Below, in pieces: positions 2,875 to 62,045 of a stretch of DNA of 64,000 nt. The notes under the pieces are model-generated. The model ran no database searches and was not told the origin of the DNA. It saw nothing but the letters and a program-made list of their open reading frames with translations. Source of the DNA: Octopus sinensis. Lineage: Eukaryota. The position numbers were made by a program, and so were the translations under genes. The stretch lies in assembly GCF_006345805.1 (NCBI RefSeq), contig NC_042999.1:51088001-51152000 (forward strand), read 5' to 3'. Each line of letters begins with the position of its first letter. Position 1 is the first letter of the stretch.

Positions 2875-3535
2875 CGCTAAGCACAAGGCCTGAAATTTTT
2901 AGCGAGAGTGCCAGTCAATTAGATCAACCCCAGTACCCAACTGGTACTTAATTTATAAACCCCGAAAGATGAAAGGCAAAGTCGACCTTGGCAAAATTTG
3001 AACACAGAATATAAAGACAGAAGAAATACCTCTAAGTATTTCACCTGGTATGCTAACGTTTCTTATTTCTTTATTGCTAAACATAGAGGGGACAAACAAG
3101 GACAGACAAAGGGATTAAGTCGATTACATTGACCCCAGTGCATAACTGGTACTGAATTTATCGACCCTGAAAGGATGAAAGGCAAAGTCGACCTCGATGG
3201 AATTTGAACTCAGAACGTAACGGCAGACAAAATACCTATTTCTTTATTACCCACAAGGGGCTAAACATAGAGGGGACAAACAAGGACAGACATAGGTATT
3301 AAGTCGATTACATCGACACCAGTGCGTAGCTGGTACTTAATTTATCGACCCCGAAAGGATGAAAAGCAAAGTCGACCTCGGCAGAATTTGAACTCACAAT
3401 GTTGCGCCAGACGAAATACCGCTAAGCATTTCGCCCGGCACGTTAACGTTTCTGCCAGCTCGCTGCCTTAGTGGCAGACAAAATACCGCTAAGCATTTTG
3501 CCCAGCATGCTAATGTTTCTGCCAGCTCACTGCCT
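2875..3535 (-). mobile_element. SINE family B multimer
   Basis: Three repeats of the core CCCGAAAGGATGAAAGGCAAAGTCGACCTCGGCGGAATTTGAACTCAGAA. The core resembles the MetaSINE/Sauria-type central domain (from memory, unverified). Confidence 0.8.
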
Positions 3536-6373: not shown

Positions 6374-7490
6374 AACCACAAAACTACAGACCTATAACCT
6401 GTCTCCCTACAATTTACAAAGCCTTTACTGCAATAATATCGCAGAGATTGAGCGAGCATCTGGAAGAAAACAACCTGTTTCCAGAAGAGCAGAAGATCAA
6501 TAAAGCCATAACTGAAGACAGCTGCTGAAAGAAGAAAGTCCTCAGTATGGCCTGGATCAACTACCAAAAGGCTTTTGATTGTATTCCCCACACGTGGATC
6601 CTTGAAACACTAGCCAAGAACAAGGTAGCACCAATAATTATAAGATTCATAAGACACTCTATGTATAAATGGAAGACAGTGCTACATCTCCAAACAAAAG
6701 AGGGGCTCGTAAAAACTAAAGCTATTCCCATTAGAAGAGGAATATTCCAGGGAGACACGCTCTCTCCACTCCTTTTCTGCTTGGCACTGTCACCTCTATC
6801 TGATATGCTAAATAGAACTGGATGCGGATATAAATGTTATGGCAAAACGATCAGCCACCTTTTATATATGGATGACCTAAAACTATACGCTACAAATGGT
6901 AAACAGCTGAAAACACTACTACAGATTTACCAAAGAAATAGATATGAAATTTGGATTAGAAAAATATGCCGGAGCAACCCTGAAAAGAGGAAAAGTAGTT
7001 AAGAGTAGCAACATCACACTAGATAAAGCCAATGAAATAAGAGAATTAGACCAAAGCCAGACATACAAATATTTAGGAATCAATGAACTAGATACGATAC
7101 AACACACACAAATGAAAAAAATAAAGAAAGAATACTATAGACGAGTTAGATCAATACTGAAAACAGAGCTCAATGCTAAAAACAAGATAATAGGTATTAA
7201 CACTTTAGCCGTCCCAATTATAAGTTACAGCTACAATATCCTTAACTGGACACTAAATGAACTAACCAAAATAGACAAGAAAACAAGAAAATAATGACAG
7301 GATCTAGGATGCACCACCCAAAATCTGACATAGAAAGGCTATATATGCAACGTATAGAAAGTGGTAGAGGCCTTATACAGCTGGAAAACTATTATAAAAT
7401 AACCACCATAGGACTGCAAAAATATCTACTTCAGAAGCAAGGAAAACTAATACAGATAGCTACAAAACACAAGCAAAGCAAAAAACTGGT
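6374..7490 (+). pseudogene. R4/Dong-like non-LTR retrotransposon RT fragment (frameshifted, truncated at both ends)
   Basis: Peptides NYRPITCLPTIYK, AWINYQKAFDCIPH, RGIFQGDTLSPLLFCLAL, HLLYMDDLKLYA, YKYLG and HHPKSDIERLYMQRIESGRGL are typical of R4-clade RT. The 5' junction lies in (AAT)n. Confidence 0.85.
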
Positions 7491-10019: not shown

Positions 10020-10241
10020 ACAGTGGCAAACTGGTAGAATCGTTAGCATGCCAAGCACAATGCTTAGTGGCATTCCATCTGTCTATATACAATGTGTTCA
10101 AATTCTGCCAAGGCTGACTTTGCCTTTTCATCCTTTTGAGGTCAATAAAATAAGTACCAGTTATGTGCTGAGGTCAGTGTAATTGACTAGCCCCCTCCCC
10201 CACAATTTCATGCCTTGTGTCTATAGTACAAAAGATTATCA

Positions 10242-10287
<46 letters not shown>

Positions 10288-10497
10288 GGTGGTAAGCTCG
10301 CAGGATCGTTAGCACATTGGAGGAAATGCTTAGCAGTATTTCACCTATCACTACATTATGAGTTCAAATTCCGCTGAGGTTAATTTTGCCTTTCATCCTT
10401 TCAGGGTCGATAAATTAAGTACCAGAAAACCCTACGGTTGATGTAATTGACTCATCCCCTCCCCCAATATTGCTGCCCTTGTGGCAAAATTTGAAAC

Positions 10498-10549
<52 letters not shown>

Positions 10550-10618
10550 TTATTATTATTATTATTGTTATTGTTGTTGTTGTTGTTGTTGTTATTATTA
10601 TTATTATTATTATTATTG

Positions 10619-10689
<71 letters not shown>

Positions 10690-10899
10690 GGTGGTAAGCT
10701 CGCAGGATCGTTAGCACATTGGAGGAAATGCTTAGCAGTATTTCACCTATCACTACATTATGAGTTCAAATTCCGCTGAGGTTAATTTTGCCTTTCATCC
10801 TTTCAGGGTCGATAAATTAAGTACCAGAAAACCCTACGGTTGATGTAATTGACTCATCCCCTCCCCCAATATTGCTGCCCTTGTGGCAAAATTTGAAAC

Positions 10900-10948
<49 letters not shown>

Positions 10949-11021
10949 GTTATTGTTGTTGTTGTTGTTGTTATTATTATTATTATTATTATTATTGTTG
11001 TTATTATTATTATTATTATTA

Positions 11022-11062
<41 letters not shown>

Positions 11063-11280
11063 GTTATTATTATTATTATTGTTATTATTATTATAATTGT
11101 CAAGGTAGTGAGCTGGCAGAACTGTTAGCACACCGGGCAAAATGCTAAGTGGTGTTTCATCTGTCTTTCCATTCTGAGTTCAAATTCCACCAAGGTTGAC
11201 TTTACCTTTCATCCTTCCAGAGTTGATGAAATAAGTATCCCTTCCCCCAAATTTTCAGGCCTTGTGCTTTTAGTAGAAAG
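10020..11280 (+). mobile_element. Cluster of four SINE family B copies, each followed by (ATT)n, including a tandem duplication
   Basis: The SINE bodies at 10287-10500 and 10688-10900 are identical by eye. Confidence 0.85.
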
Positions 11281-12339: not shown

Positions 12340-14076
12340 TATCCACTCAGTCGAAGTCGACTCTCGGTCACTCATTGGATCAGTGTCCTCCAGTCAGTTC
12401 TATCCTGGGCCGCTTCTTTCAGACTGGCTATGTCCATTCCGGTATCACTCTTGATGGTGTCAAGCCAGTGGGTTCTTGGTCGGCCTCTTCCTCTCTTGCC
12501 ACTGACCATTCCGAGCATGATGTCCTTCTCCAGGGATTTTCTCTGCGTAATATGACTGAAATATGCCAATCTATGCTTGGGGATCCTAGCTTCTAGCGAC
12601 ATTTTCGGCCTGATCTGCTTAAGAACTTCTCCATTGGTGAGCCTCGCTGTCCATGGAATCCGCAAAAGTCTTCTCCAACACCAAAGCTCGAATGCATTAA
12701 TTCTCTTCTGGTCAGCTTTCTTTAGTGTCCAGGTCTCACATCCATATGTTGCTATTGGGAAGACAATTGCATTCACCAATCTGCATTTGGTAGCGAGTCT
12801 GATGTCTCTACTCTTCCAGACCCTGCTCATGCTGACCATTGCCTCTCTGCCTAGAACTATCCGCCATCTTATTTCTGGAGTGCAGTCACCATCTCGATTT
12901 ATTTTGGAGCCAAGGAAGATGAAATCATCAACCACTTCAATCTCTTCATTATCGATCTTGATGCTGATGTTTGTTGTAGCTGCTGTTGACATGATCTTCA
13001 TTTTCTTAACATTGAGGTACAGCCCAAATTTCTCACTCTCTTTCTTGACCAGCAGGACAAGATCCTCCAGATCCTTACCACTCTCCGCCAGCAGGGTTGT
13101 ATCATTTGCATAGCGAAGGTTATTAATATTTCTTCCTCCAATCCTCACTCCAATGCTACTATCCTCCAGGCCTGCATTCCTCGTGACCTTCTCAGCGTAC
13201 ATGTTGAAGGCAGCTGGTGACAGGATGCAACCTTGCCGAGTGCCTTTTCCAATCTCAAACCAATCAGTGTTGCCATATGGTGTCTGTACTGTAGCCTCTT
13301 GGTTTTGATAGAGTGATCTAATAAGCTGGACAAGGTGTAAAGGTGTTCCCATTTCCTCCAGACATTTCCATAACTTGTCATGATCAATGCTGTCAAAGGC
13401 TTTGGAGTAATTGATGAAACACATGTACAGCTTCTTTTGGTATTCTCTTGCCTTTTCCATAATCCACCGTAGGTCGGCGATGTGATCGCGGGTGCCTCTT
13501 CCTTTTCTGAAACCAGCTTGCACCTCTGGCAATTCTCTCTCAATAGTTGTTCAGGCACCTCTGGATGATTTTAAGGAGAATTTTGCTTACATGGGGGATC
13601 AGGGTGATGGTACTGTTGTTTGTGCAGTCCTTGGTATCTCTTTTCTTTGATATTGGGATGAAAACTGACCTCTTCCATTCCCTTGGCCACTTACAGATTC
13701 TCCATATTCGTTGGCAAAGCGATGTTAGTGTTTTTGTTGGTATTGGCTTGAGTAATTCTAGTGGAATATCATCAGTACCTGGAGCTTTTCGGTTGGCCAG
13801 CTGTTTTATTGCCCATACCACCTCATCCTCCAGGATATCTGGCTCCAGTTCCAGTTCCAGTGACTTCTCTTCTGCCTGTTCATTGAGATTGTTCCCTGCA
13901 TACAACTGTACAGTGTACTCTTTCCATCTTTTCCTGATCCCTTCTTGGTCATGTAGTTCTTCACCATTTCTCCCTTGGATGGTTGCTTGTCTGGCCATGA
14001 ATGCTGTACGAGTCTTCTTTACATGTTGGTCTTCTTTACATGTTGGTCTTCTTTACATGTTGGTCTTCTTTACATG
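12340..14076 (-). pseudogene. RTE (BovB-like) LINE, 5'-truncated, with a nearly intact RT region
   Basis: ORFs 13540-13998 and 12372-13532 are joined by a single frameshift near 13545. Motifs: RKAPGTDDIP, QAGFRKGRGTRDHI, YSKAFDSIDH, RQGCILSP, NLRYANDTTL (YADD changed to YAND), FIFLGS, YGCETWT, RGRGRPRTHWLD. Confidence 0.92.
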
Positions 14077-21819: not shown

Positions 21820-22502
21820 CTTTTACTCTTTTACTTGTTTCAGTCATTTGACTGTGGCCATGCTGGAGCACCGCCTTTGGTCGAGCAAATCGACCTCGGG
21901 ACTTATTCTTTGTAAGGCCAGTACTTATTCTATCGGTCTCTTTTTGCCAAACCACTAAGTTACGAGAACGTAAACACACCAGCATCGGTTGTCAAACGAT
22001 GCTGGGGGAACAAACATAAACACATACATATATATATATATACATACATATATATATTTCTTTACTACCCACAAGGGGCTAAACACAGAGGGGACAAACA
22101 AGGACAGACAAAGGGATTAAGTCGACTACATCGACCCCAGTGCGTAACTGGTACTTAATTTATCGACCCCGAAAGGATGAAAGGCAAAGTCGACCTCGGC
22201 GGAATTTGAACTCGGAACGTAACGACAGACGAAATACGGCTACGAATTTCGCCCAGCGTGCTAACGTTTTTACCAGCTCGCTAACGTTTCTACCAGCGTG
22301 CTAACGTTTCTACCAGCTCGCCGTATATACATACATATATACGACAGGCTTCTTTCAGTTTCTGTCTACCAAATCCGCTCACAAGGCATTGGTCGGCCCG
22401 GGGTTATAGCAGAAGACAATTGCCCAAGATGCCACGCAGTGGGACTGAACCTGGAACCATGTGGTTGGTTAGCAAGCTACTTACCACACAGCCACTCCTG
22501 CG
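21820..22502 (-). mobile_element. SINE family A with a family B copy nested in its microsatellite (~22057-22325)
   Basis: Tail 21820-22030 and head 22340-22502 flank a full family B body. Confidence 0.8.
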
Positions 22503-27981: not shown

Positions 27982-29042
27982 AGGCATAGGAGTGGCTGTG
28001 TGGTAAGTAGCTTGCTTACCACTAAGGCTGCGAGCTGGCAGAATTGTTAGCACGCCGGGCGAAATGCTTTGTGGTATTTCGTCCACCGCTGCATTCTGAG
28101 TTCAAATTCCGCCGAGGTCGACTTTACCTTTCATCCTTTCAGGGTCGATAAATTAAGTACCAGTTACGCACTGGGGTCGATGTAATCGACTTAATCCATT
28201 TGTCTGTACTTGTTTGTCCCCTCTATGTTTAGCCCCTTGTGGGCAATAAAGAAATAGGTATTTCTTCTATGAAAGAAGAGAGAAAAAAAAAAGCCCCTTC
28301 AGTGGGATGTGTGCCACCGGAGGTGGGGCAGTGGGATGTGTGCCACCGAGTGAGAGAGTTGAGGCTCCTCTCAGTGAAGGTAGTGAGGAATGTATGTTCT
28401 GCTATCTCAAGGGAGAGGCTCTCAACAGTTTTGTCGAGAATAAGATGGACAGTCAGATCCTAAAGGAACCGAATTGCATTGACAGCTCAGAGTGGCCTTC
28501 ACAGGTGGCTGCTCTAGTGCTGGAAAGAAAACAATGCAATATGATAATCAACTCATGTGGAGGCGAGATTTTCAGAATTCTCCATTGGAACCCCCAATTT
28601 TGGTGGAAACAGTGCCTGCAAGTTGCACGAGATTTGCTGGGGGAGGAAGTGTAGAGGTTTATTGCCTCTAATTGGTGTATAGACTTTATTTTGATTGTAT
28701 GGACTTTTGGTCCAAGAAATTGTATTTTTTGTAAGAGTTTATGCATTTTTGGAAAAAAAAAAATGTTTTAGAGAAGCAGAGGGTCGCCTTCTGCCTCTCC
28801 CATCTTTATCATTTTTCATCATAATTATCCGCTTCATTAATATTTATGTCTAGCCCGCAAGCTACTCTGTGTAATGCCTTTATGGCAAATTTCTATGAAA
28901 TAAAGTAGCTTGCTTACCAACCACATGGTTCCAGGTTCAGTCCCACTGCGTGGCACCTTGGGCAAGTGTCTTCTACTATAGCCTCGGGCCAAAAAAAACC
29001 TTGTGGGTGGATTTGGTAGACGGAAACTGAAAGAAGCTCGTC

Positions 29043-29094
<52 letters not shown>

Positions 29095-29310
29095 ATATGT
29101 TTGTGTCTGTGTTTGTCCCCCCAACATCGTTTGACAACCTATGCTGGTGTGTTTACGTCCCCGTAACTTAGTGGTTCAGCAAAAGAGACCAATAGAATAA
29201 GTGCTAGGCTTACAAAGAATAAGTCCTGGGGTTGATTTGCTTGACTAAAGACGGTGCTCCAGCATGGCTGCAGTCAAATGACTGAAACAAGTAAAAGAGT
29301 AAGAATATAA
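27982..29310 (+). mobile_element. SINE family A interrupted in its tRNA-like head by an insert (28022-28902) with a 17-bp TSD
   Basis: TSD AAGTAGCTTGCTTACCA at 28005-28021 and 28903-28919. The insert is a SINE B copy (~28023-28260) plus an unclassified retroelement 3' region ending ATGAAATA. Confidence 0.85.
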
Positions 29311-46875: not shown

Positions 46876-47931
46876 GTGACAATATGTTTTATTTCATATC
46901 AAACATGTGCAAGAAAAGCATATAACAAAATTAGTCTCTGAATATTGAATAAGTTCGCAAACAATTTTTATATGCTAACAAACAGAAAAAAAATTCAAAG
47001 TAAAGAAACCAAAATAAATATGAATATTTTTTTAATTTGATAAAACGTTTCCAATCTATCTGTATCCTTTTTGCATTTTTATTCTTTCTTTATTCTTTTT
47101 AACATTATCAAAAACATATTTTCAGATATTTCATATTTTACTTTCTCTGAAATGATTATTCTCAAATATTAAATTTACTTTAATGAAAAAAAACATTACT
47201 AATGCTAGATTCTCAATTGAATTTTCAATTTGCCAGCATTTTTGAAGATTATCTGTATTTTGGCCGTTGTATTTCCACTAGCAACTGATTTTCTTTGTTT
47301 ATTGTTACCTCCCCTTCCTCCTCACATTTTGCAATTAATTTTCTCTCATATCCTCTATTTTCACTCTACCTACTCAGCACTACAAGCATAAATACACACA
47401 CACACACACTCTCTCTCTTTCTCTCTTCTCCTTCCTAGACAAAGGGTTCTACTGCTCAAAATATTAAGCATCTCTTTTTCCTCACAACTAAAATAATTTA
47501 TTCTACTATGCAAACTTTCAGTAGAATTTCTTGTATCCATGGCCACTTTAGTTTTGAAGTCTGCAGGACATTTTTTCCAAAGTTAAATAATTTATTAAAC
47601 TTAATAAATCATTAAACACCAAGCTGAGTACAAGCTACCAGAAATGATCTCTACGTAAATATCAGTGGATTCTCAATCATTTGTATTAGATTTACCGATG
47701 TTTAAAAATCTTGTAAATGTCATATTTTAATAGGTTTATTTATTTATTGAAATGAGGATGGGAGGAGCGTCTACCCAAGTGATATTTGAACACAAAATAC
47801 TTTAACATAATTATAATTTGACCAGACATGTTGTTGTTGTCATTTTGCTCCCAAGTCAGCTCTGATAAAAGTATTTCGTTCCTGATCATCTATTTGAATT
47901 ACATTGTTACCTCCATCATTGTCATCAGTGC

Positions 47932-47971
<40 letters not shown>

Positions 47972-48149
47972 GTCATCTTTTAACATTGACATCACCATTG
48001 TCATCATCATCATCATCATCATCGTCATCATCACACCATTATCATCATCATAGTCATCATCATTATAATCAACACCATTTTTGCTGTAATTATCATTATC
48101 ATCAACATCATTAACATTATCATCATCATCATCATCATCATCATCATTA

Positions 48150-48730
48150 CCTATTTCCTTACTACCCACAGGGGGCTAAACACAGAGCGGACAAACAGAT
48201 TAAGTCGATTATATCGACCCCAGTGCGTAACTGGTACTTATTTAATCAACCCCGAAAGGATGAAAGGCAAAGTCGACCTCGGCGGAATTTGAACTCAGAA
48301 TGTAACGGCAGACAAAATACCTATTTCTTTACTACCCACAAGGGGCTAGACACAGAGAGGACAAACAAGGACAGACAAATGGATTAAGTTGATTATATCG
48401 ACCCTAGTGCGTAACTGGTACTTATTTAATTGACCCCGAAAGGATGAAAGGCAAAGTCGACCTCGGCGGAATTTGAACTCAGAATGTAACGGCAGACAAA
48501 ATACCTATTTCTTTACTACCCACAAGGGGCTAGACACAGAGAGGACAAACAAGGACAGACAAATGGATTAAGTTGATTATATCGACCCTAGTGCGTAACT
48601 GGTACTTAATTTATCGACCCCGAAAGGATGAAAGGCAAAGTCGACCTCAGCAGAATTTGAACTCAGAACGTAACGGCAGACGAAATACCGCTCAGCATTT
48701 TGCCCGGCGTGCTAACGTTTCTGCCAGCTC
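48150..48730 (-). mobile_element. SINE family B trimer (~184-bp units)
   Basis: Repeated junction CGGCAGACAAAATACCTATTTCTTTACTACCCACAAGG at ~48306 and ~48490. Confidence 0.88.
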
Positions 48731-49927
48731 CATCCTCATCAACATCATTCTTGCTGTATTCATTGTTATCGCTATCATCCTTGTTCTTTTCATTGCCCTA
48801 ATTGTCATCATCGTCATTGTCTTTGTTGCCATTGTCATTAACATCATCATTATTCTCAGTTTTTTGTCGCTATTGTTATTGTTGAGCTCCAAGTCATCCC
48901 TCATTGAGTAGATTTACTTTCAAACGCTTTCCATCTACGACCATCCAGGCTTTTCATATATCTACAGCTATCCAAACCAGCAGCTAAATTATCTCTCCTG
49001 TATAGGCCATTAGGTTCTCACAAATATCAAAGATTCCCATAGAATCAATATTCTTTCCTGATTTTTAAGACAGACTGAGGCCCTTGTGCTGGAGTTTAAC
49101 CCCAGATTAATTCCTTAATGTTCAGGTTATTCTATCAAATTTGGTTCCATTAGTTACAATGACAAGGGTTCCTGCTGCTCCGATCAATGGAACAGCTTGC
49201 TTGGGAAATTAATGTGCACATGACTGAGTGCTCCACAGACATGTACTTTTGATATAGTTCTCAAGGAGATTCTGTGTAACACAGAGTGTGACAAGGCTTG
49301 CTCTTTGAAACACAAGTACTAAGCACTGGATTAACCATTAAAGAAAATAAGCACATGCTTAGGGCATCAAGAGAAGGAGAGGGGGCACCACAGAAATGGT
49401 TAATGGTTTATGGCACAAAAGAAATCACATTAAACTTGCTAAAGTAATATTCAGGATGCCTTTATCTCTACTAAATATAGATGCAGATGTATTACCTAAG
49501 ATTAATTTTGAGGATCTGATCAAAGACTTTGCAATTTAAAAAAGTAGGAGGAAACTATTCAAATATAAATAAAGTGGAAGTATACAAAAATAGACATTAT
49601 TTTCCCTCTTACTGTTTTGTTTTGTTTTGAAAAATAGAAATTTAATTTACGGTTTGTTATTGTTTATATTTTGAATTATATAATCTTTTATGGGGGGTCA
49701 CCAAAATCTTTTAAGTGCTTATGGGCTCAATGGGTCTCAATCCAGCCTTGCAAGTACTACTAATTTTTGCCAGCTGAGCAAGATGAAATAAGTGTCTTGC
49801 TCAAGGATGCAACACGTCACCGGGAATTGAACTCACAACCTTACGATCATGAGCCAAATACCCTAACCACTAGGCTACATGCCTTCACTCTGTCAAATTT
49901 AATGCTTATTTATTCATATTGTTTTGA

Positions 49928-50305
49928 AGGTGTAGGAGTGGCTGTGTGGTAAGTAGCTTGCTTACCAGCCTCATGGTTCCAGGTTCAGTCCCACTGCGTG
50001 GCACCTTGGGCAAGTGTCTTCTACTGTAGCCTCGGGCCAACCAAAGCCTTGTGAGTGGATTTGGTAGACGGAAACTGAAAGAAGCCCATATATGTATGTG
50101 TGTGTGTATATGTTTGTGTGTCTGTGTTTGTCCCCCCAACATCAATGCTGGTGTGTTTATGTCCCCTTCACTTAACGGTTCGGCAAAAGAGACTGATAGA
50201 ATAAGTACTAGGCTTACAAAGAATAAGTCCTGGGGTCCATTTGCTCAACTAAAGGCAGTGCTCCAGCATGGCCACAGTCAAATGACTGAAACGAGTAAAA
50301 GAAAA
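49928..50305 (+). mobile_element. SINE family A
   Basis: Family motifs. Confidence 0.85.
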
Positions 50306-50959
50306 ATTAATCATGCTTCATCTTGCAGCTTTGAGATTTTGATGATGTGATTATTTTATTCTTTAGAATGATATTGTAGAGTAGGTGTGAGAGGCTGGAT
50401 CTGACTAGTTTGAACATAAAACAGGTAGAATATTTGGGCCAGATATGGCAGTTTTAAATGCTAAAGGGCTAAGCTTATAAATAAACTTTATTCTAGTTGT
50501 AACCGTCCCACCTTATTTGGGGTTTTTCAGAACTACATTATCAACCATGTCTTTCTCCTTTTTAAAATGGCTAGGGTAGAGCATAAAAGAGTTTTGGTTG
50601 TTGTTTCTAATGGGTTTTTACTTAACTTATGTGATCTGTGTGAAAGAGGCTTTGCTTATTTTCCCTACTAGTTTGCAGAATGAGAACGAACTTCCATAGT
50701 ATATATTTCTTGCGAGCTATTATCATCAGTTACACCATCACCGTGTCCTCCATAACAACAACTACCACCACTGTTATCATCATCATCAGCAGCAGCAGCA
50801 GCAATAATATGTTGACCAATGATATCTTTTGTAGATGTTGAATTATTACTGTGGTATATTGTGTACAGCAATGTGAAAGGATAACCCTACAGAATATCAA
50901 AGCAATAACGAATAACGTTGACAAAATATTAAAATAATATCAAAATAATTCCTTCTAAT

Positions 50960-53384: not shown

Positions 53385-53936
53385 CTTTTATTCTTTTACT
53401 TGTTTCAGTCACTTGGCTGCAGCCATGCTGGAGCTCCAACTGAAGGAGTTTTTAGTTGAAGAAATTGACCCCAAGACTTATTCTTTGTAAGCCTAGTATA
53501 TTCTATCGGTTTTTCTTTTTGTCAAACTGCTAAGTTGTGGGGATGTAAACGCACCAACATTGGTTGTCAAGTGATGGTCAAGCAACAGAAAGACACACAT
53601 AAATATATATACATAAGTACATACAGTAAGTAGCTTACTTACCAGCCACATGATTCTGGGTTCAGTCCCACTGCATGGCACTTTGGGCTTCTACTATAGC
53701 CAACCAAAGCCTTGTGGGTGGATTTGGAAGACAGAAACTGAAAGAAGCCCATCGTGTGTGTGTCTGTGTTTGTCCCCACCACTATTGCTTGACAACATTC
53801 CCCCGTAACTTAGCAGTTCAGCAAAAGAGACTGATAGAATAAGTACTAGGCTTACAAAGAATATATCTTGGGGTTGATTTGTTTGACTAGGTGGTGTTCC
53901 AGCATAGCTGCAGTCAAATGACTGAAACAAATAAAA

Positions 53937-54032: not shown

Positions 54033-54649
54033 CACACACACATACATATAAGTGGGATGACCACTACGTGGCCAACCCTTATGCTAGAAGTAGATCTGCT
54101 ATGGTCTTAACACAAAGAAAGGAATGTTCTCAAACGACAGGCTTCTTTCAGTTTCCATCTATCAAATCCACTTTCAAGGCTTTGGTCAGCCAGAGGCTAT
54201 AGTAGATGACACTTACCCAACATGTCACACAGTAGGACTGAACCTGGAACCATGTGGTTGGGAAGCAAGCTTCTTACCACACAGTCACACCTGCACCTAT
54301 AATGTTAACAATTCTGCCAGCTTGCTACCTTACTTTAAAGTAATACTGAAATAATACAAACAGACAATGGATGTGCCAGTTATGGTTTTAATGGTTAAGC
54401 AAAGAGACAGATGTCTAAATTTAAACCAGTAACAAGGTATTGTCTGATTATATTATTTCGATATTATTTTGATATCTTGTCATTTTATTATCACATTATA
54501 TTTTCACACTGTCAATAATATAATTATTTTATTATATTCTCACACTTTGAAAAATAATATAATTATTATATTATTGTTTAATTGTCTCACATTGTTGTAA
54601 ACAACTTACAAAAGCAGCAACTCAATACACAATATAAAACATGTTGATC

Positions 54650-55540: not shown

Positions 55541-55936
55541 GAATCATTGGATGTATCAGCTACTCACTTTCACATCACTGATTACGTCTTGTAATTTTTA
55601 TTGTTCAATCCTCTTCATAATCTCAGTTCCTAGAATAACATACAAGTAAATGTGCAAGCAAGATTCTACATGTTAAACTTAAACACGACAGCACAACAAT
55701 GCGTTTTGGCATAAAACAATCTCATTATACAAAAATTGTAGTAAATTAGAAGCAATCATTTATAATTAGAAACAATTTTAAGGAAGTTGTTTTAAAGTAA
55801 ATTAGAAAACAACAGGCTTTCTTCTAATTAGTGTAATTGTTTCTAAAATAAACACAAGGCCTGAAATTTGTGAAGATGGAGTGAATTGAAACCATCGACT
55901 CCAGCACTAGGCAACTACTTTGCTTTATCAATGCAG

Positions 55937-56540
55937 AAGTGTTTGTGTGGTAAGAAGCTTTCTTCCTGGAGGACTCCTACAGATTTATGTCTGTGTGGTC
56001 TGGTCTGGAACCGAGTACATGCTTCAATGAAGCAAGGAGACTGGTCGGCCGGATAACTTGAACTTTTGGACTCAAAAAAGAGTCTACAAAATGTGAAATA
56101 TGTGACTTTTGTGTAATGTACGAGGTTTATAGCCTCATTGTGTTTTAAAAAAGAAAAAAAAAGAAAGAATTCTGAACATTGTGTTTTTTATGTAAGAGGT
56201 TTGTTGCCTCATTGTGTTTTCGGGAAAAAGGAAAAAAGAACATTGTTTTAGAGAAGCGAAAGTCAGCGGGCGCTTTTCGTCTTCTCCCATCCTTATCATC
56301 CTTGCATCATTATCATTCATCCCATAAATGTCTGTGTCCAGCCCGCAAAGCTTCTATCTGTGTGATGCCCTTGTGGCAAATTAAATGAAATAAAGAAGCT
56401 TTCTTCCCAGGCACATGGTGGTTCTGAGTTCACTCCCACTGTCTTCTAATTGGGCAAGAGTCTTCTGCTATTGGCCCTTAGGCTGACCAAAGCCCTTGTG
56501 AGTGGATTTGGTAGACAAAAACTGTAAGAAGCCCATTGTA
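55937..56540 (+). mobile_element. SINE family A (different subfamily) interrupted in its head by an insert (55967-56392) with a 15-bp TSD
   Basis: TSD AAGAAGCTTTCTTCC at 55952-55966 and 56393-56407. The insert 3' end is homologous to ~28770-28902 and ends ATGAAATA. Confidence 0.85.
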
Positions 56541-61444: not shown

Positions 61445-62045
61445 ATATACGACGGGCTTCTTTCAGTTTCTGTCTACCAAATCCACTCACAAGGCTTTGG
61501 TCGGCCTGAGGCTATTGTACAAGACACTTGCCCAAGGTGCCACGCAGTGGGACTGAACCCGGAACCATGTGGTTGGTAAGCAAGCTACTTACCACACCTT
61601 TTTCTTTTATTCTTTTACTTGTTTCAGTCATTTGACTGCAGCCATGCTGGAGCACCGTCTTTAGTCAAGCAAATCAACCCCAGGACTTATTCTTTGGAAC
61701 CCTAGTACTTATTCTATCAGCCTCTTTTGCCGAACCACTAAGTTACAGGGACGTAAACACACCAGCATCAGTTGTCAAGTGATGTTGGCCGGACAAACAC
61801 AGACACACAAACATATACACACACACATACATCATATATATATATATATATACATGTATATATATATATACATATATATACAACAGGCTTCTTTCAGTTT
61901 GTGTCTACCAAATCCACTCACAAGGCTTTGGTCGGCCCGAGGCTATAGTAGAAGACACTTGCCCAAGGTGCCATGCAGTGGGACTGAACCTGGAATCATG
62001 TGGCTGGTAAGCAAGCTACTTACCACGCAGCTACTCCTGCACCTA
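61445..62045 (-). mobile_element. SINE A head plus a full SINE A copy in tandem
   Basis: ~61445-61597 and ~61600-62045. Confidence 0.82.

What the first reader, a model, noticed from the sequence alone, without database searches (positions are those of the whole stretch)
55937..56407. Candidate SINE-targeting retroelement, copy 2, an independent insertion into a different SINE subfamily
Seen: 15-bp TSD AAGAAGCTTTCTTCC (55952-55966 and 56393-56407), starting at the same SINE coordinate as copy 1. The host variant (AGAAGCTTTCTTCC versus AGTAGCTTGCTTACC), insert length, 5' end and TSD length all differ. Inference: the 3'-end (first-strand) nick position is fixed while the second nick varies, as expected for site-specific TPRT, and the target sequence tolerates substitutions, so recognition may be partly structural.
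Basis: partly seen in the sequence, partly recalled or inferred. Interest (0 to 1): 0.8.

Follow-up and report, generated by a model that had tools for sequence, protein, structure and literature searches.

The report
Retroelement that lands in SINE heads
A 426-bp retrotransposon tail fragment sits inside a SINE repeat at exactly the same spot as a second, independent copy 27 kb away, and each copy carries a short internal stretch complementary to its own landing site, which hints at base-pairing-assisted targeting, although the evidence is only two copies.

Summary
An exact 15-bp duplication (55952-55966 / 56393-56407) flanks a 426-bp insert inside the tRNA-like head of a CORE-type SINE ("SINE A"). 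Copy 1 (insert 28021-28902, 16/17-bp duplication) starts at the identical SINE coordinate (GGT|AAG). Both inserts end precisely in ...ATGAAATA, lack terminal inverted repeats, are homologous over ~290 bp and share a ~60-bp 3' tail with a second SINE family. They are therefore 5'-variable copies of a non-LTR retroelement inserted by target-primed reverse transcription.

The two insertions are independent: their 5' ends, duplication lengths and tail variants differ, and the hosts are only 76% identical. Both halves of copy 2's duplication carry a substitution found in no other head of the window.

"SINE-targeting" is suggestive only. These are the only two copies in the window. Chance is ~1e-3 for a 4-5-nt nick motif but 0.2-0.6 for 7-8 nt.

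New here: 46 nt from its 3' end, each tail carries a 9-10-nt block exactly complementary to its own target variant (1/2000 shuffles each; cross-matches at chance). This suggests RNA-target pairing.

No RT/endonuclease partner or outside copies could be retrieved.

The parts
55930..55966 (+). Host SINE A head of copy 2, left part (divergent copy)
   Evidence: Aligns with the 5' ends of 18 other SINE A heads; 66-83% identical to them.
55952..55966 (+). Left target-site duplication, AAGAAGCTTTCTTCC
   Evidence: Exact 15/15 repeat.
55967..56392 (+). Insert X2: 5'-truncated retroelement 3' region, 426 bp, ending ...CCCTTGTGGCAAATTAAATGAAATA
   Evidence: Homologous to copy 1 over ~290 bp; 3' tail shared with SINE B; no terminal inverted repeats.
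56116..56236 (+). Internal ~74-bp tandem repeat of the 3' region (two units, 79% identical)
   Evidence: the repeat finder family D1; also found by self-BLAST.
56347..56355 (+). Anti-target block AAAGCTTCT, the reverse complement of target positions 2-10 (AGAAGCTTT)
   Evidence: Longest antisense match 9 nt, reached by 1/2000 shuffles; only 5 nt against copy 1's target; forms the closing stem in the RNA fold.
56366..56378 (+). Conserved small hairpin TGCC-CTTGT-GGCA in the tail (candidate RT-recognition stem-loop)
   Evidence: Paired in both folds; the motif is conserved in the SINE B and B' tails. The function is inferred.
56393..56407 (+). Right target-site duplication
56408..56540 (+). Host SINE A head of copy 2, right part (B-box-like GAGTTCACTCC and CORE-like domain)
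   Evidence: BLAST to the SINE A head; alignment.
27985..28020 (+). Copy 1: host SINE A head, left part, including the left duplication at 28005-28020
28021..28256 (+). Copy 1 insert, 5' part: full-length SINE B (starts ACTAAGG, ends AAGAAATA)
   Evidence: Same 5' end as the nested SINE B at 3472; BLAST.
28257..28291 (+). Copy 1 junction segment GGTATTTCTTCTATG plus an A-rich run (origin unexplained)
   Evidence: Resembles SINE B positions 48-62 and also the X tail end.
28292..28654 (+). Copy 1: orphan 120-codon open frame plus stop
   Evidence: Open frame; no Pfam family, no word-index homologue and only spurious exhaustive-HMMER hits.
28655..28902 (+). Copy 1: 3' region homologous to X2, ending ATGAAATA
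28857..28866 (+). Copy 1 anti-target block GCAAGCTACT, the reverse complement of target positions 2-11
   Evidence: 10-nt exact match, reached by 1/2000 shuffles; inverted repeat I1; RNA stem with z -3.97.
28903..29300 (+). Copy 1: right duplication (28903-28918) and the rest of host SINE A (head, (TA)n, tail module)
3222..3487 (-). Supporting case: full-length SINE B (3472-3237) nested in another SINE B with a perfect 15-bp duplication GGTATTTTGTCTGCC (3487-3473 / 3236-3222)

Best explanation
The insert is the 3' portion of a non-LTR retroelement ('X'). X is either a LINE of the stringent, tail-recognising type or a long non-autonomous derivative of one. Its ~60-nt 3' tail is shared with the SINE B and B' families, so X and these SINEs probably use the same reverse transcriptase and endonuclease. 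Shown: X integrated by a TPRT-like route. The 3' end is precise (...ATGAAATA), the first nick lies at 5'-GGT|AAG-3' in the SINE A head (between the A-box-like TGGCTGTGTGG and the B-box-like GGTTCAGTCC), the 5' end is variable, and the staggered second nick lies 15-16 nt downstream. Copy 2 and copy 1 are separate events in two different SINE A copies. Inferred: this head position is a preferred landing site, and the preference is helped by base pairing. Each tail carries, 46 nt from its 3' end, a 9-10-nt block with the same sequence as the nicked bottom-strand primer end (that is, complementary to the top strand of the target). In a transcript that reads through into the flanking SINE, this block pairs with the downstream target sequence and closes off the 3' tail in a stem-loop. 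At a new SINE head, the nicked DNA end could replace the block, anneal to the read-through sequence and place its 3'-OH exactly at the end of the tail. That would explain the fixed first nick, the precise 3' junction and the co-variation of block and target.
For: Exact 15-bp and 16/17-bp duplications at the same SINE coordinate. The empty site is seen in 18 other heads. Homology runs over ~290 bp with an identical 3' terminus, and the tail is shared with SINE B and B'. There are no terminal inverted repeats. These are the only two X copies in the window and both lie in heads. Independence: the hosts are 76% identical, G10T is seen in no other head of the window yet occurs in both duplication halves, and P(0 differences in 15 nt) is 0.016-0.06 if the insertion were as old as the host's divergence. 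Chance of co-location is 1.4e-4 (uniform), ~1e-3 (4-5-nt motif) and ~0.015 (6-nt motif). Block-target complementarity is 10 nt and 9 nt, each reached by 1/2000 shuffles, at the same tail position, while cross-combinations reach only 5 nt (chance level); both target differences are mirrored. The X1 fold gives -20.5 kcal/mol with z -3.97, and X2 has the same architecture. The complement of X2's block occurs only in host 2 among 17 candidate heads. SINE B, which has the same tail type, also nests at a fixed position of a SINE head with a 15-bp duplication. Precedents for LINE/SINE pairs targeting another repeat, and for precise 3' with variable 5' boundaries, are in PMC4494074 and PMC4640811.
Against: There are only two copies, and the pairing was found post hoc. 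No RT or endonuclease ORF could be linked to X: the 120-codon frame is an orphan. A 7-8-nt nick preference alone makes two head hits unremarkable (p 0.23-0.64). SINE B copies with the same tail type use varied targets (AGAA-type sites, microsatellites) and show no comparable tail-target complementarity. The X2 stem is not energetically significant (z 0.01), and X2's target is nearly palindromic, which blurs sense and antisense. Read-through transcription of X is assumed, not shown.
Confidence: 0.5

Rival explanations
1. Ordinary LINE-type insertion with a short purine-rich nick preference (about Y|AAGWA(G)). SINE A heads are simply the commonest carriers of that motif, and the block-target complementarity is coincidence.
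For: SINE B copies with the same tail type nick at similar sites outside SINE A: ACC|AAGAAAG, AAT|AGAATAA and GGC|AGAAACG. TAAGWAG sites are 48% in SINE A heads and TAAGWAGC sites 80%, giving p(both) of 0.23-0.64. The finding was selected because it looked striking.
Against: If specificity is as loose as the SINE B junctions suggest (4-6 nt), p(both) is 3e-4 to 0.016. Coincidence must also cover two 9-10-nt antisense matches at the same tail position that track the two target variants (1/2000 each).
Confidence: 0.2
2. Secondary spread. A few old primary insertions into SINE heads were copied into other SINE A copies by ectopic gene conversion or recombination between SINEs, carrying both duplication halves and the tail block along. 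The apparently host-specific variants would then belong to the donor lineage.
For: It would explain why the block and both duplication halves share variants. Outside the duplication, host 2 is not clearly closer to the other AAGAAG-type heads than to the young heads.
Against: The two copies differ in 5' end, length, duplication length and tail sequence (75% identity), so at least two primary events at the same coordinate are still needed. The outer flanks share no homology. It does not explain why block and target are complementary in the first place.
Confidence: 0.12
3. X is really a tRNA-gene-specific element, like the tRNA-targeting NeSL and LIN families. SINE A heads, being tRNA-derived, act as abundant decoy targets.
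For: tRNA-gene-specific non-LTR families exist: NeSL-1_TV, LIN15_SM and LIN25_SM (PMC4640811). The site lies in the tRNA-like part of the head, between the A and B boxes (read by eye).
Against: The window has no tRNA gene to examine. The heads are too diverged to be recognised as tRNAs by ARAGORN, or by Rfam over the 2.5-kb sample searched, which holds one SINE A head. Each tail block matches the SINE variant it sits in.
Confidence: 0.08
4. The targeting is protein-determined, and the block-target complementarity arose after insertion by hairpin- or cruciform-templated correction of an imperfect inverted repeat 37 nt apart.
For: The block and the right duplication form a close inverted repeat in the DNA.
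Against: It requires independent correction in both copies, and in copy 2 the matching base is also present in the left duplication half 441 bp away.
Confidence: 0.08

Closest known systems
Tx1-Mar LINEs with SINEU partners targeting Mariner-N4_AMi in crocodilians; Xenopus Tx1L targeting Tx1D (Kojima 2015, PMC4494074)
   Same: A LINE/SINE pair sharing a target preference for one position in another interspersed repeat family; a ~16-bp target-site duplication; nested or tandem SINE insertions at the site; the target is a high-copy 'safe' sequence.
   Different: Here the target is the tRNA-like head of a SINE, not a DNA transposon. Clade membership (Tx1, APE-type endonuclease) cannot be tested because no RT/EN ORF was found. 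The tail is not Tx1-like by any test run here. The evidence is 2 copies rather than dozens.
tRNA-gene-specific non-LTR retrotransposons (NeSL-1_TV, LIN15_SM, LIN25_SM; PMC4640811); Dewa, recalled from memory
   Same: Integration at a fixed position within a tRNA-type sequence; precise 3' boundary and variable 5' boundary.
   Different: Those elements target functional multicopy tRNA genes and mostly encode a restriction-like endonuclease. Here the targets are decayed SINE copies, and the tail block follows the SINE variant.
R1/R2-type use of co-transcribed target sequence for annealing to the nicked target, and the R2 5' ribozyme stem that includes 28S sequence (established knowledge, recalled; co-transcription is also discussed in PMC4494074)
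   Same: Proposed pairing between element RNA plus flanking target sequence and the target DNA, which fixes the start of reverse transcription and reinforces site specificity.
   Different: An internal 3'-UTR block that mimics the DNA primer and pairs with the read-through target has not, to my knowledge, been described. Here it is an inference from two copies.
Group II intron retrohoming (EBS-IBS pairing; established knowledge)
   Same: A retroelement RNA segment complementary to the DNA target that co-varies with it.
   Different: Entirely different element class and chemistry (ribozyme reverse splicing). There is no intron structure here. It is an analogy only.
RTE/Bov-B LINEs and their SINEs, with a split 'Tn-TA' insertion signature (PMC13295347)
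   Same: A LINE and its partner SINE share a characteristic target-site signature that can be read from the duplications.
   Different: That is a loose signature with dispersed integration sites. Here the coordinate is identical, and no T-stretch lies ~10 nt upstream of the nick (the sequence there is GGCTGTGTGGT).

Membership tests
Non-LTR retroelement inserted by TPRT (LINE or LINE-dependent element) | Flanking target-site duplication generated from host sequence | tested here: met
   15/15 and 16/16 (17/17) exact repeats of SINE A sequence; the empty site is seen in 18 paralogous heads.
Non-LTR retroelement inserted by TPRT (LINE or LINE-dependent element) | Precise common 3' end, variable or truncated 5' end, and no LTRs or terminal inverted repeats | tested here: met
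   Both copies end in ATGAAATA; the 5' ends differ; no terminal inverted or long direct repeats.
Non-LTR retroelement inserted by TPRT (LINE or LINE-dependent element) | 3' tail shared with partner SINE(s) | tested here: met
   A ~60-nt tail with the CCYTTRTGG hairpin and a terminal GAAATA is shared with SINE B, and the B' tail is closer still.
Autonomous LINE | Encodes reverse transcriptase and endonuclease | tested here: not met
   These copies contain no RT or EN. The 120-codon frame has no Pfam family or credible homologue. The window's RT ORFs belong to unrelated elements. The copies are truncated, so the family as a whole is untested.
Target-specific non-LTR retrotransposon | A large majority of copies lie at one position of one target sequence | tested here: inconclusive
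   2 of 2 copies in the window; significance depends on the assumed motif length; no outside copies were obtainable.
Target-specific non-LTR retrotransposon | Fixed 3' junction with respect to the target | tested here: met
   Both junctions read GAAATA|AAG directly after GGT of the head.
Tx1, R1 or NeSL/R2 clades | RT phylogeny and endonuclease type (APE or restriction-like) | not testable with these tools
   No full-length X element is available.
CORE-SINE / octopus OR1-like tRNA-derived SINE (the host) | tRNA-derived head recognisable by tRNA models | tested here: not met
   ARAGORN finds no tRNA in the window, and Rfam finds no tRNA match over 47900-50400, which includes one SINE A head and a SINE B array. 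A-box-like and B-box-like motifs were read by eye only.
CORE-SINE / octopus OR1-like tRNA-derived SINE (the host) | Conserved CORE central domain | tested here: inconclusive
   The CCTTGGGCAAGT... region resembles CORE from memory. The same central domain (head positions 65-158) is conserved in Argonauta hians. OR1 is listed as a CORE-SINE in PMC4824008.

The most novel reading that the evidence does not exclude
An octopod LINE/SINE system homes to SINE heads by nucleic-acid pairing rather than by endonuclease specificity alone. The 3' UTR carries a short 'primer-mimic' block that pairs with co-transcribed downstream target sequence. The nicked SINE head displaces the block to start reverse transcription at a fixed base. 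Block variants co-evolve with SINE subfamilies, giving lineage-specific homing of one repeat family into another.
Probability: 0.22. Interest if true: 0.75.

Novelty: new variant of a known kind. Interest (0 to 1): 0.55.

Why it matters
Retrotransposons that target other repeats avoid damaging genes and shape how repeat-rich genomes such as those of octopods are built. A lineage that lands in the promoter-bearing head of a SINE would both use a very abundant safe site and split that SINE's A and B boxes, acting as a parasite of a parasite. If the tail-target complementarity is real, it would be a case where target choice in a non-LTR element depends in part on RNA-DNA or RNA-RNA pairing and can be reprogrammed by a few base changes. 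That bears on how target specificity evolves and on the design of retroelement-based insertion tools. All of this rests on two copies and needs a genome-wide census.

Tried and rejected
1. Protein identification of the insert: Pfam, word-indexed search and exhaustive HMMER. The only hits were a repeat protein whose score sums one weak 36-residue match, and a bacterial Ig-like protein. Rejected as homology.
2. The window's own RT ORFs as partner: 12372-13532(-) is Bov-B/RTE-like with an unrelated 3' UTR, and 6547-7002(+) is another RT fragment. Rejected.
3. Getting more copies: a junction-spanning ORF query returned only one Argonauta hians protein, whose locus shares only the SINE central domain. 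The RT query returned no cephalopod anchors. L002 has no SINE A or B. A 16-base tail pattern in viral contigs gave only chance hits. The SINE A head core is absent from viral and metagenome contigs.
4. DNA transposon: no terminal inverted repeats.
5. Single origin by segmental duplication: the outer flanks are unrelated and the inserts differ.
6. A third event at the head starting at 53626: better read as a 5'-truncated SINE A inserted in the microsatellite of an inverted SINE A.
7. Structural (hairpin) recognition: weak, and not conserved between the two hosts.
8. Equivalent tRNA position of the SINE A and SINE B sites: by eye they lie 31 and 25 nt upstream of the B box in different arms; tRNA models do not align the heads.
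9. Resemblance of the tail to the head sequence upstream of the nick (CTGTGTGGT): not significant.
10. Tail-target complementarity in SINE B insertions: none, apart from an 8-nt terminal palindrome at one junction.

Full report
WHAT IS THERE. The window is AT-rich, repeat-dense animal DNA (GC ~37%). It is probably octopod. The only protein-database relative of a SINE-derived open frame is from Argonauta hians, and the host SINE has the CORE-like central region attributed in the literature to the octopus OR1 SINE (PMC4824008). The species assignment is an inference. The string AAGAAGCTTTCTTCC occurs exactly at 55952-55966 and 56393-56407. Joining the flanks gives a continuous head of an abundant SINE ("SINE A", about 20 heads in the window). 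So 55967-56392 (426 bp) is an insertion and the 15-mer is its target-site duplication.

COPY 1. Its SINE A head starts at 27985, an exact repeat AAGTAGCTTGCTTACC(A) sits at 28005-28020(21) and 28903-28918(19), and the insert is 28021-28902. Both duplications begin at the same SINE base, the A after GTGTGGT.

WHAT THE INSERT IS. The two inserts are alignable over about the last 290 bp (75% identity over the best 164 bp) and end in the same ...ATGAAATA directly against the duplication. Upstream of that they are not alignable. There are no terminal inverted repeats or LTRs. X2 contains two ~74-bp tandem units. The last ~60 nt, including a small conserved hairpin (TGCC-N5-GGCA) and the terminal GAAATA, are shared with a second SINE family ("SINE B") and more closely with a B-like subfamily sitting in (ATT)n at 10.3-10.9 kb. 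That is the classic LINE/SINE shared-tail relationship. Together with the precise 3' end, the variable 5' end and the 15-17-bp duplication, it identifies X as a non-LTR retroelement copy made by target-primed reverse transcription.

I could not show that X is a LINE. Copy 1 has a 120-codon open frame ending in a stop (28292-28654), but it has no Pfam family, no word-index homologue and only spurious exhaustive-HMMER hits. The RT-coding remnants in the window belong to other elements: one is Bov-B/RTE-like with an unrelated 3' UTR.

Copy 1's insert is composite. A full-length SINE B, starting at the same ACTAAGG as a nested SINE B elsewhere, is followed by a 15-nt GGTATTTCTTCTATG segment, an A-rich run, the orphan frame and the X tail. 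A template switch or a chimeric source transcript could produce this. I could not decide between them.

INDEPENDENCE. The two copies differ in 5' end, length (426 vs 882 bp), duplication length (15 vs 16, or 17 counting an ambiguous A that is more likely the first base of SINE B) and tail sequence. The outer flanks are unrelated. Host 1 is a typical young head (88-94% identical to most others). Host 2 is a divergent head (66-83% to the others, 76% to host 1).

Within the duplicated region the hosts differ at positions 4, 10 and 14. T4A and A14C recur in three other heads. G10T is seen only in host 2 among the 20 heads of the window, and it is present in both halves of the duplication. If the insertion were as old as the host's divergence, 15/15 identity between the halves would have a probability of only 0.016-0.06. 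At least two separate primary events at one coordinate are therefore required. Whether the present copies are primary or were later moved by gene conversion cannot be told from one copy each.

IS IT SINE-TARGETING? A profile search finds no further X copy in the window, so 2 of 2 copies lie in SINE A heads, in sense orientation, at one coordinate. Under a uniform null the chance of the second hit is 1.4e-4. If the endonuclease needs only T|AAG or AAGWA, the chance of both is ~1e-3. For 6 nt it is ~0.015, for TAAGWAG 0.23 and for TAAGWAGC 0.64.

SINE B copies, which share the tail type, have nick sites that begin similarly outside SINE A (ACC|AAGAAAG with a ~19-20-bp duplication, AAT|AGAATAA, GGC|AGAAACG), and others lie in microsatellites. 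A short purine-rich preference is therefore real. There are two cases. If specificity is short, two hits at one coordinate are unlikely by chance. If it is 7-8 nt or longer, 48-80% of all such sites in the window are SINE A heads anyway, so the head is the de facto main target. With n = 2 and a finding selected for looking striking, I rate this as suggestive, not established.

A parallel case supports a general tendency. A full-length SINE B is nested in another SINE B with a perfect 15-bp duplication GGTATTTTGTCTGCC (3487-3473 / 3236-3222, minus strand). The same junction recurs twice in a head-to-tail SINE B array at 48730-48150.

A NEW CLUE. The repeat scan showed that a block inside X1's tail, GCAAGCTACT (28857-28866), is the exact reverse complement of target positions 2-11. 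X2 has AAAGCTTCT (56347-56355) at the same distance (46 nt) from its 3' end, which is the exact reverse complement of its own target positions 2-10. Each match is reached by 1 of 2000 dinucleotide shuffles. Each tail against the other copy's target gives only 5 nt, which is chance level. Both differences between the targets in this stretch (T/A at position 4, G/T at position 10) are mirrored in the tails.

Among 17 candidate heads, the complement of X2's block exists only in host 2. Folded as RNA with the downstream target attached, the block and target form the closing stem of a structure that encloses the whole tail. X1 gives -20.5 kcal/mol with z -3.97. X2 has the same architecture but an A/U-rich stem that is not energetically significant. 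SINE B tails show nothing comparable, and a suspected second resemblance, to the head sequence upstream of the nick, is not significant.

The block has the same sequence as the 3' end of the nicked bottom strand. I therefore propose, as an inference, that in read-through transcripts it masks the co-transcribed target sequence. At a new SINE head, the nicked DNA end takes its place and primes reverse transcription exactly at the tail end. This would explain the fixed first nick and the precise junction, and would make homing follow the SINE variant. Alternatives are coincidence, co-inheritance through gene conversion, and post-insertion hairpin-templated correction.

A fixed first nick is correct. 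'The second nick varies' amounts to 1-2 nt, so it is nearly fixed (15, 15 and 16 nt in three events, including the nested SINE B). 'Tolerates substitutions, so recognition may be structural' is not supported. The DNA hairpin at the site is modest (z -1.96 in host 1, -1.52 in host 2), and host 2's changes weaken it rather than preserve it. The tail block suggests sequence complementarity instead.

COMPARISON WITH KNOWN SYSTEMS. Target-specific non-LTR elements are well known. Their targets include rRNA, snRNA and tRNA genes, microsatellites, telomeres and other transposons (PMC4640811). The closest published case is Tx1-Mar LINEs and SINEU SINEs inserting at one site of a Mariner family, with a ~16-bp duplication and tandem SINE insertions, and Tx1L inserting into Tx1D (PMC4494074). 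I found no report of a retroelement that targets a SINE head, nor of such behaviour in cephalopods, in the searchable library. That library omits much of the older literature, including Ohshima & Okada 1994. Clade membership is untestable without a full-length element. I therefore class this as a new variant of a known kind, if it is real.

LIMITS. Every inference about targeting and pairing rests on two copies in one window.

Noticed in passing
window 2913-3534 (minus strand): SINE B nested in SINE B. Host B(1-62), a full-length SINE B insert (3472-3237) and host B(48-208), with a perfect 15-bp duplication GGTATTTTGTCTGCC. The host's own 3' end then abuts another SINE B at GGC|AGAAACG.
   Followed up: partly
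window 48150-48730 (minus strand): Head-to-tail SINE B array B(7-233)+B(48-233)+B(48-233). Each internal junction reads GAAATA|GGTATTTTGTCTGCC, and the whole array lies in a (GAT)n microsatellite. It fits a retrocopy of a nested array, or repeated insertion at SINE B position 48.
   Followed up: partly
window 28021-28291: In copy 1, a full-length SINE B abuts the SINE A duplication and is followed by GGTATTTCTTCTATG (like SINE B positions 48-62, and partly like the X tail end TTCTATGAAATAA) plus an A-rich run before the orphan frame. The origin of this chimera (template switch or chimeric source transcript) is unexplained.
   Followed up: partly
window 12372-13998 (minus strand): A LINE remnant whose 386-aa RT ORF is 57-66% identical to Bov-B/RTE proteins of ruminants and squamates. 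Its 3' UTR ends in (GA)n/(GATA)n. This is a Bov-B-like RTE in what appears to be an octopod genome.
   Followed up: partly
window 6547-7002 (+): A second reverse-transcriptase fragment (Pfam RVT_1, E 8.7e-14) from another LINE remnant.
   Followed up: no
window 10235-11090: A 402-bp tandem duplication containing a SINE B-like subfamily. Its tail GCCCTTGTGGCAAAATTTGAAACC is closer to the X tail than SINE B's is. Each unit is embedded in long (ATT)n.
   Followed up: partly
window 14762, 29853, 62039 and other SINE A 5' junctions: Full-length SINE A copies are typically preceded by (TA)n, and SINE A itself carries an internal (TA)n that hosts further insertions (for example SINE B at 22055-22281). 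SINE A thus seems to prefer TA repeats. Tandem SINE A pairs occur at 1162-1516 and 61453-62038.
   Followed up: no
window 53392-53748: A SINE A head that begins at position 19-21, essentially the X nick coordinate, joined to the microsatellite of an inverted SINE A. Most simply it is a 5'-truncated SINE A inserted into (TA)n, but the truncation point coincides with the nick site.
   Followed up: partly
window 54141-54330 (minus strand): A SINE A copy of the AAGAAG/CTTCCC variant is preceded by a SINE B head fragment (AAGGTAGCAAGCTGGCAGAATTGTTAAC), so SINE A appears to have inserted into a SINE B head, the reverse nesting.
   Followed up: no
window ~19524 and ~49862 (minus strand): A third tRNA-like repeat (…TAGTGGTTAGGGTATTTGGCTCATGA…), seen while listing GGTATTT sites.
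   Followed up: no
L001 10043-10136 (Argonauta hians, GCA_054771915.1): Only the central domain of SINE A (head positions 65-158, 87% identity) is conserved in Argonauta; the tRNA-like head with the X target is not found at that locus.
   Followed up: partly
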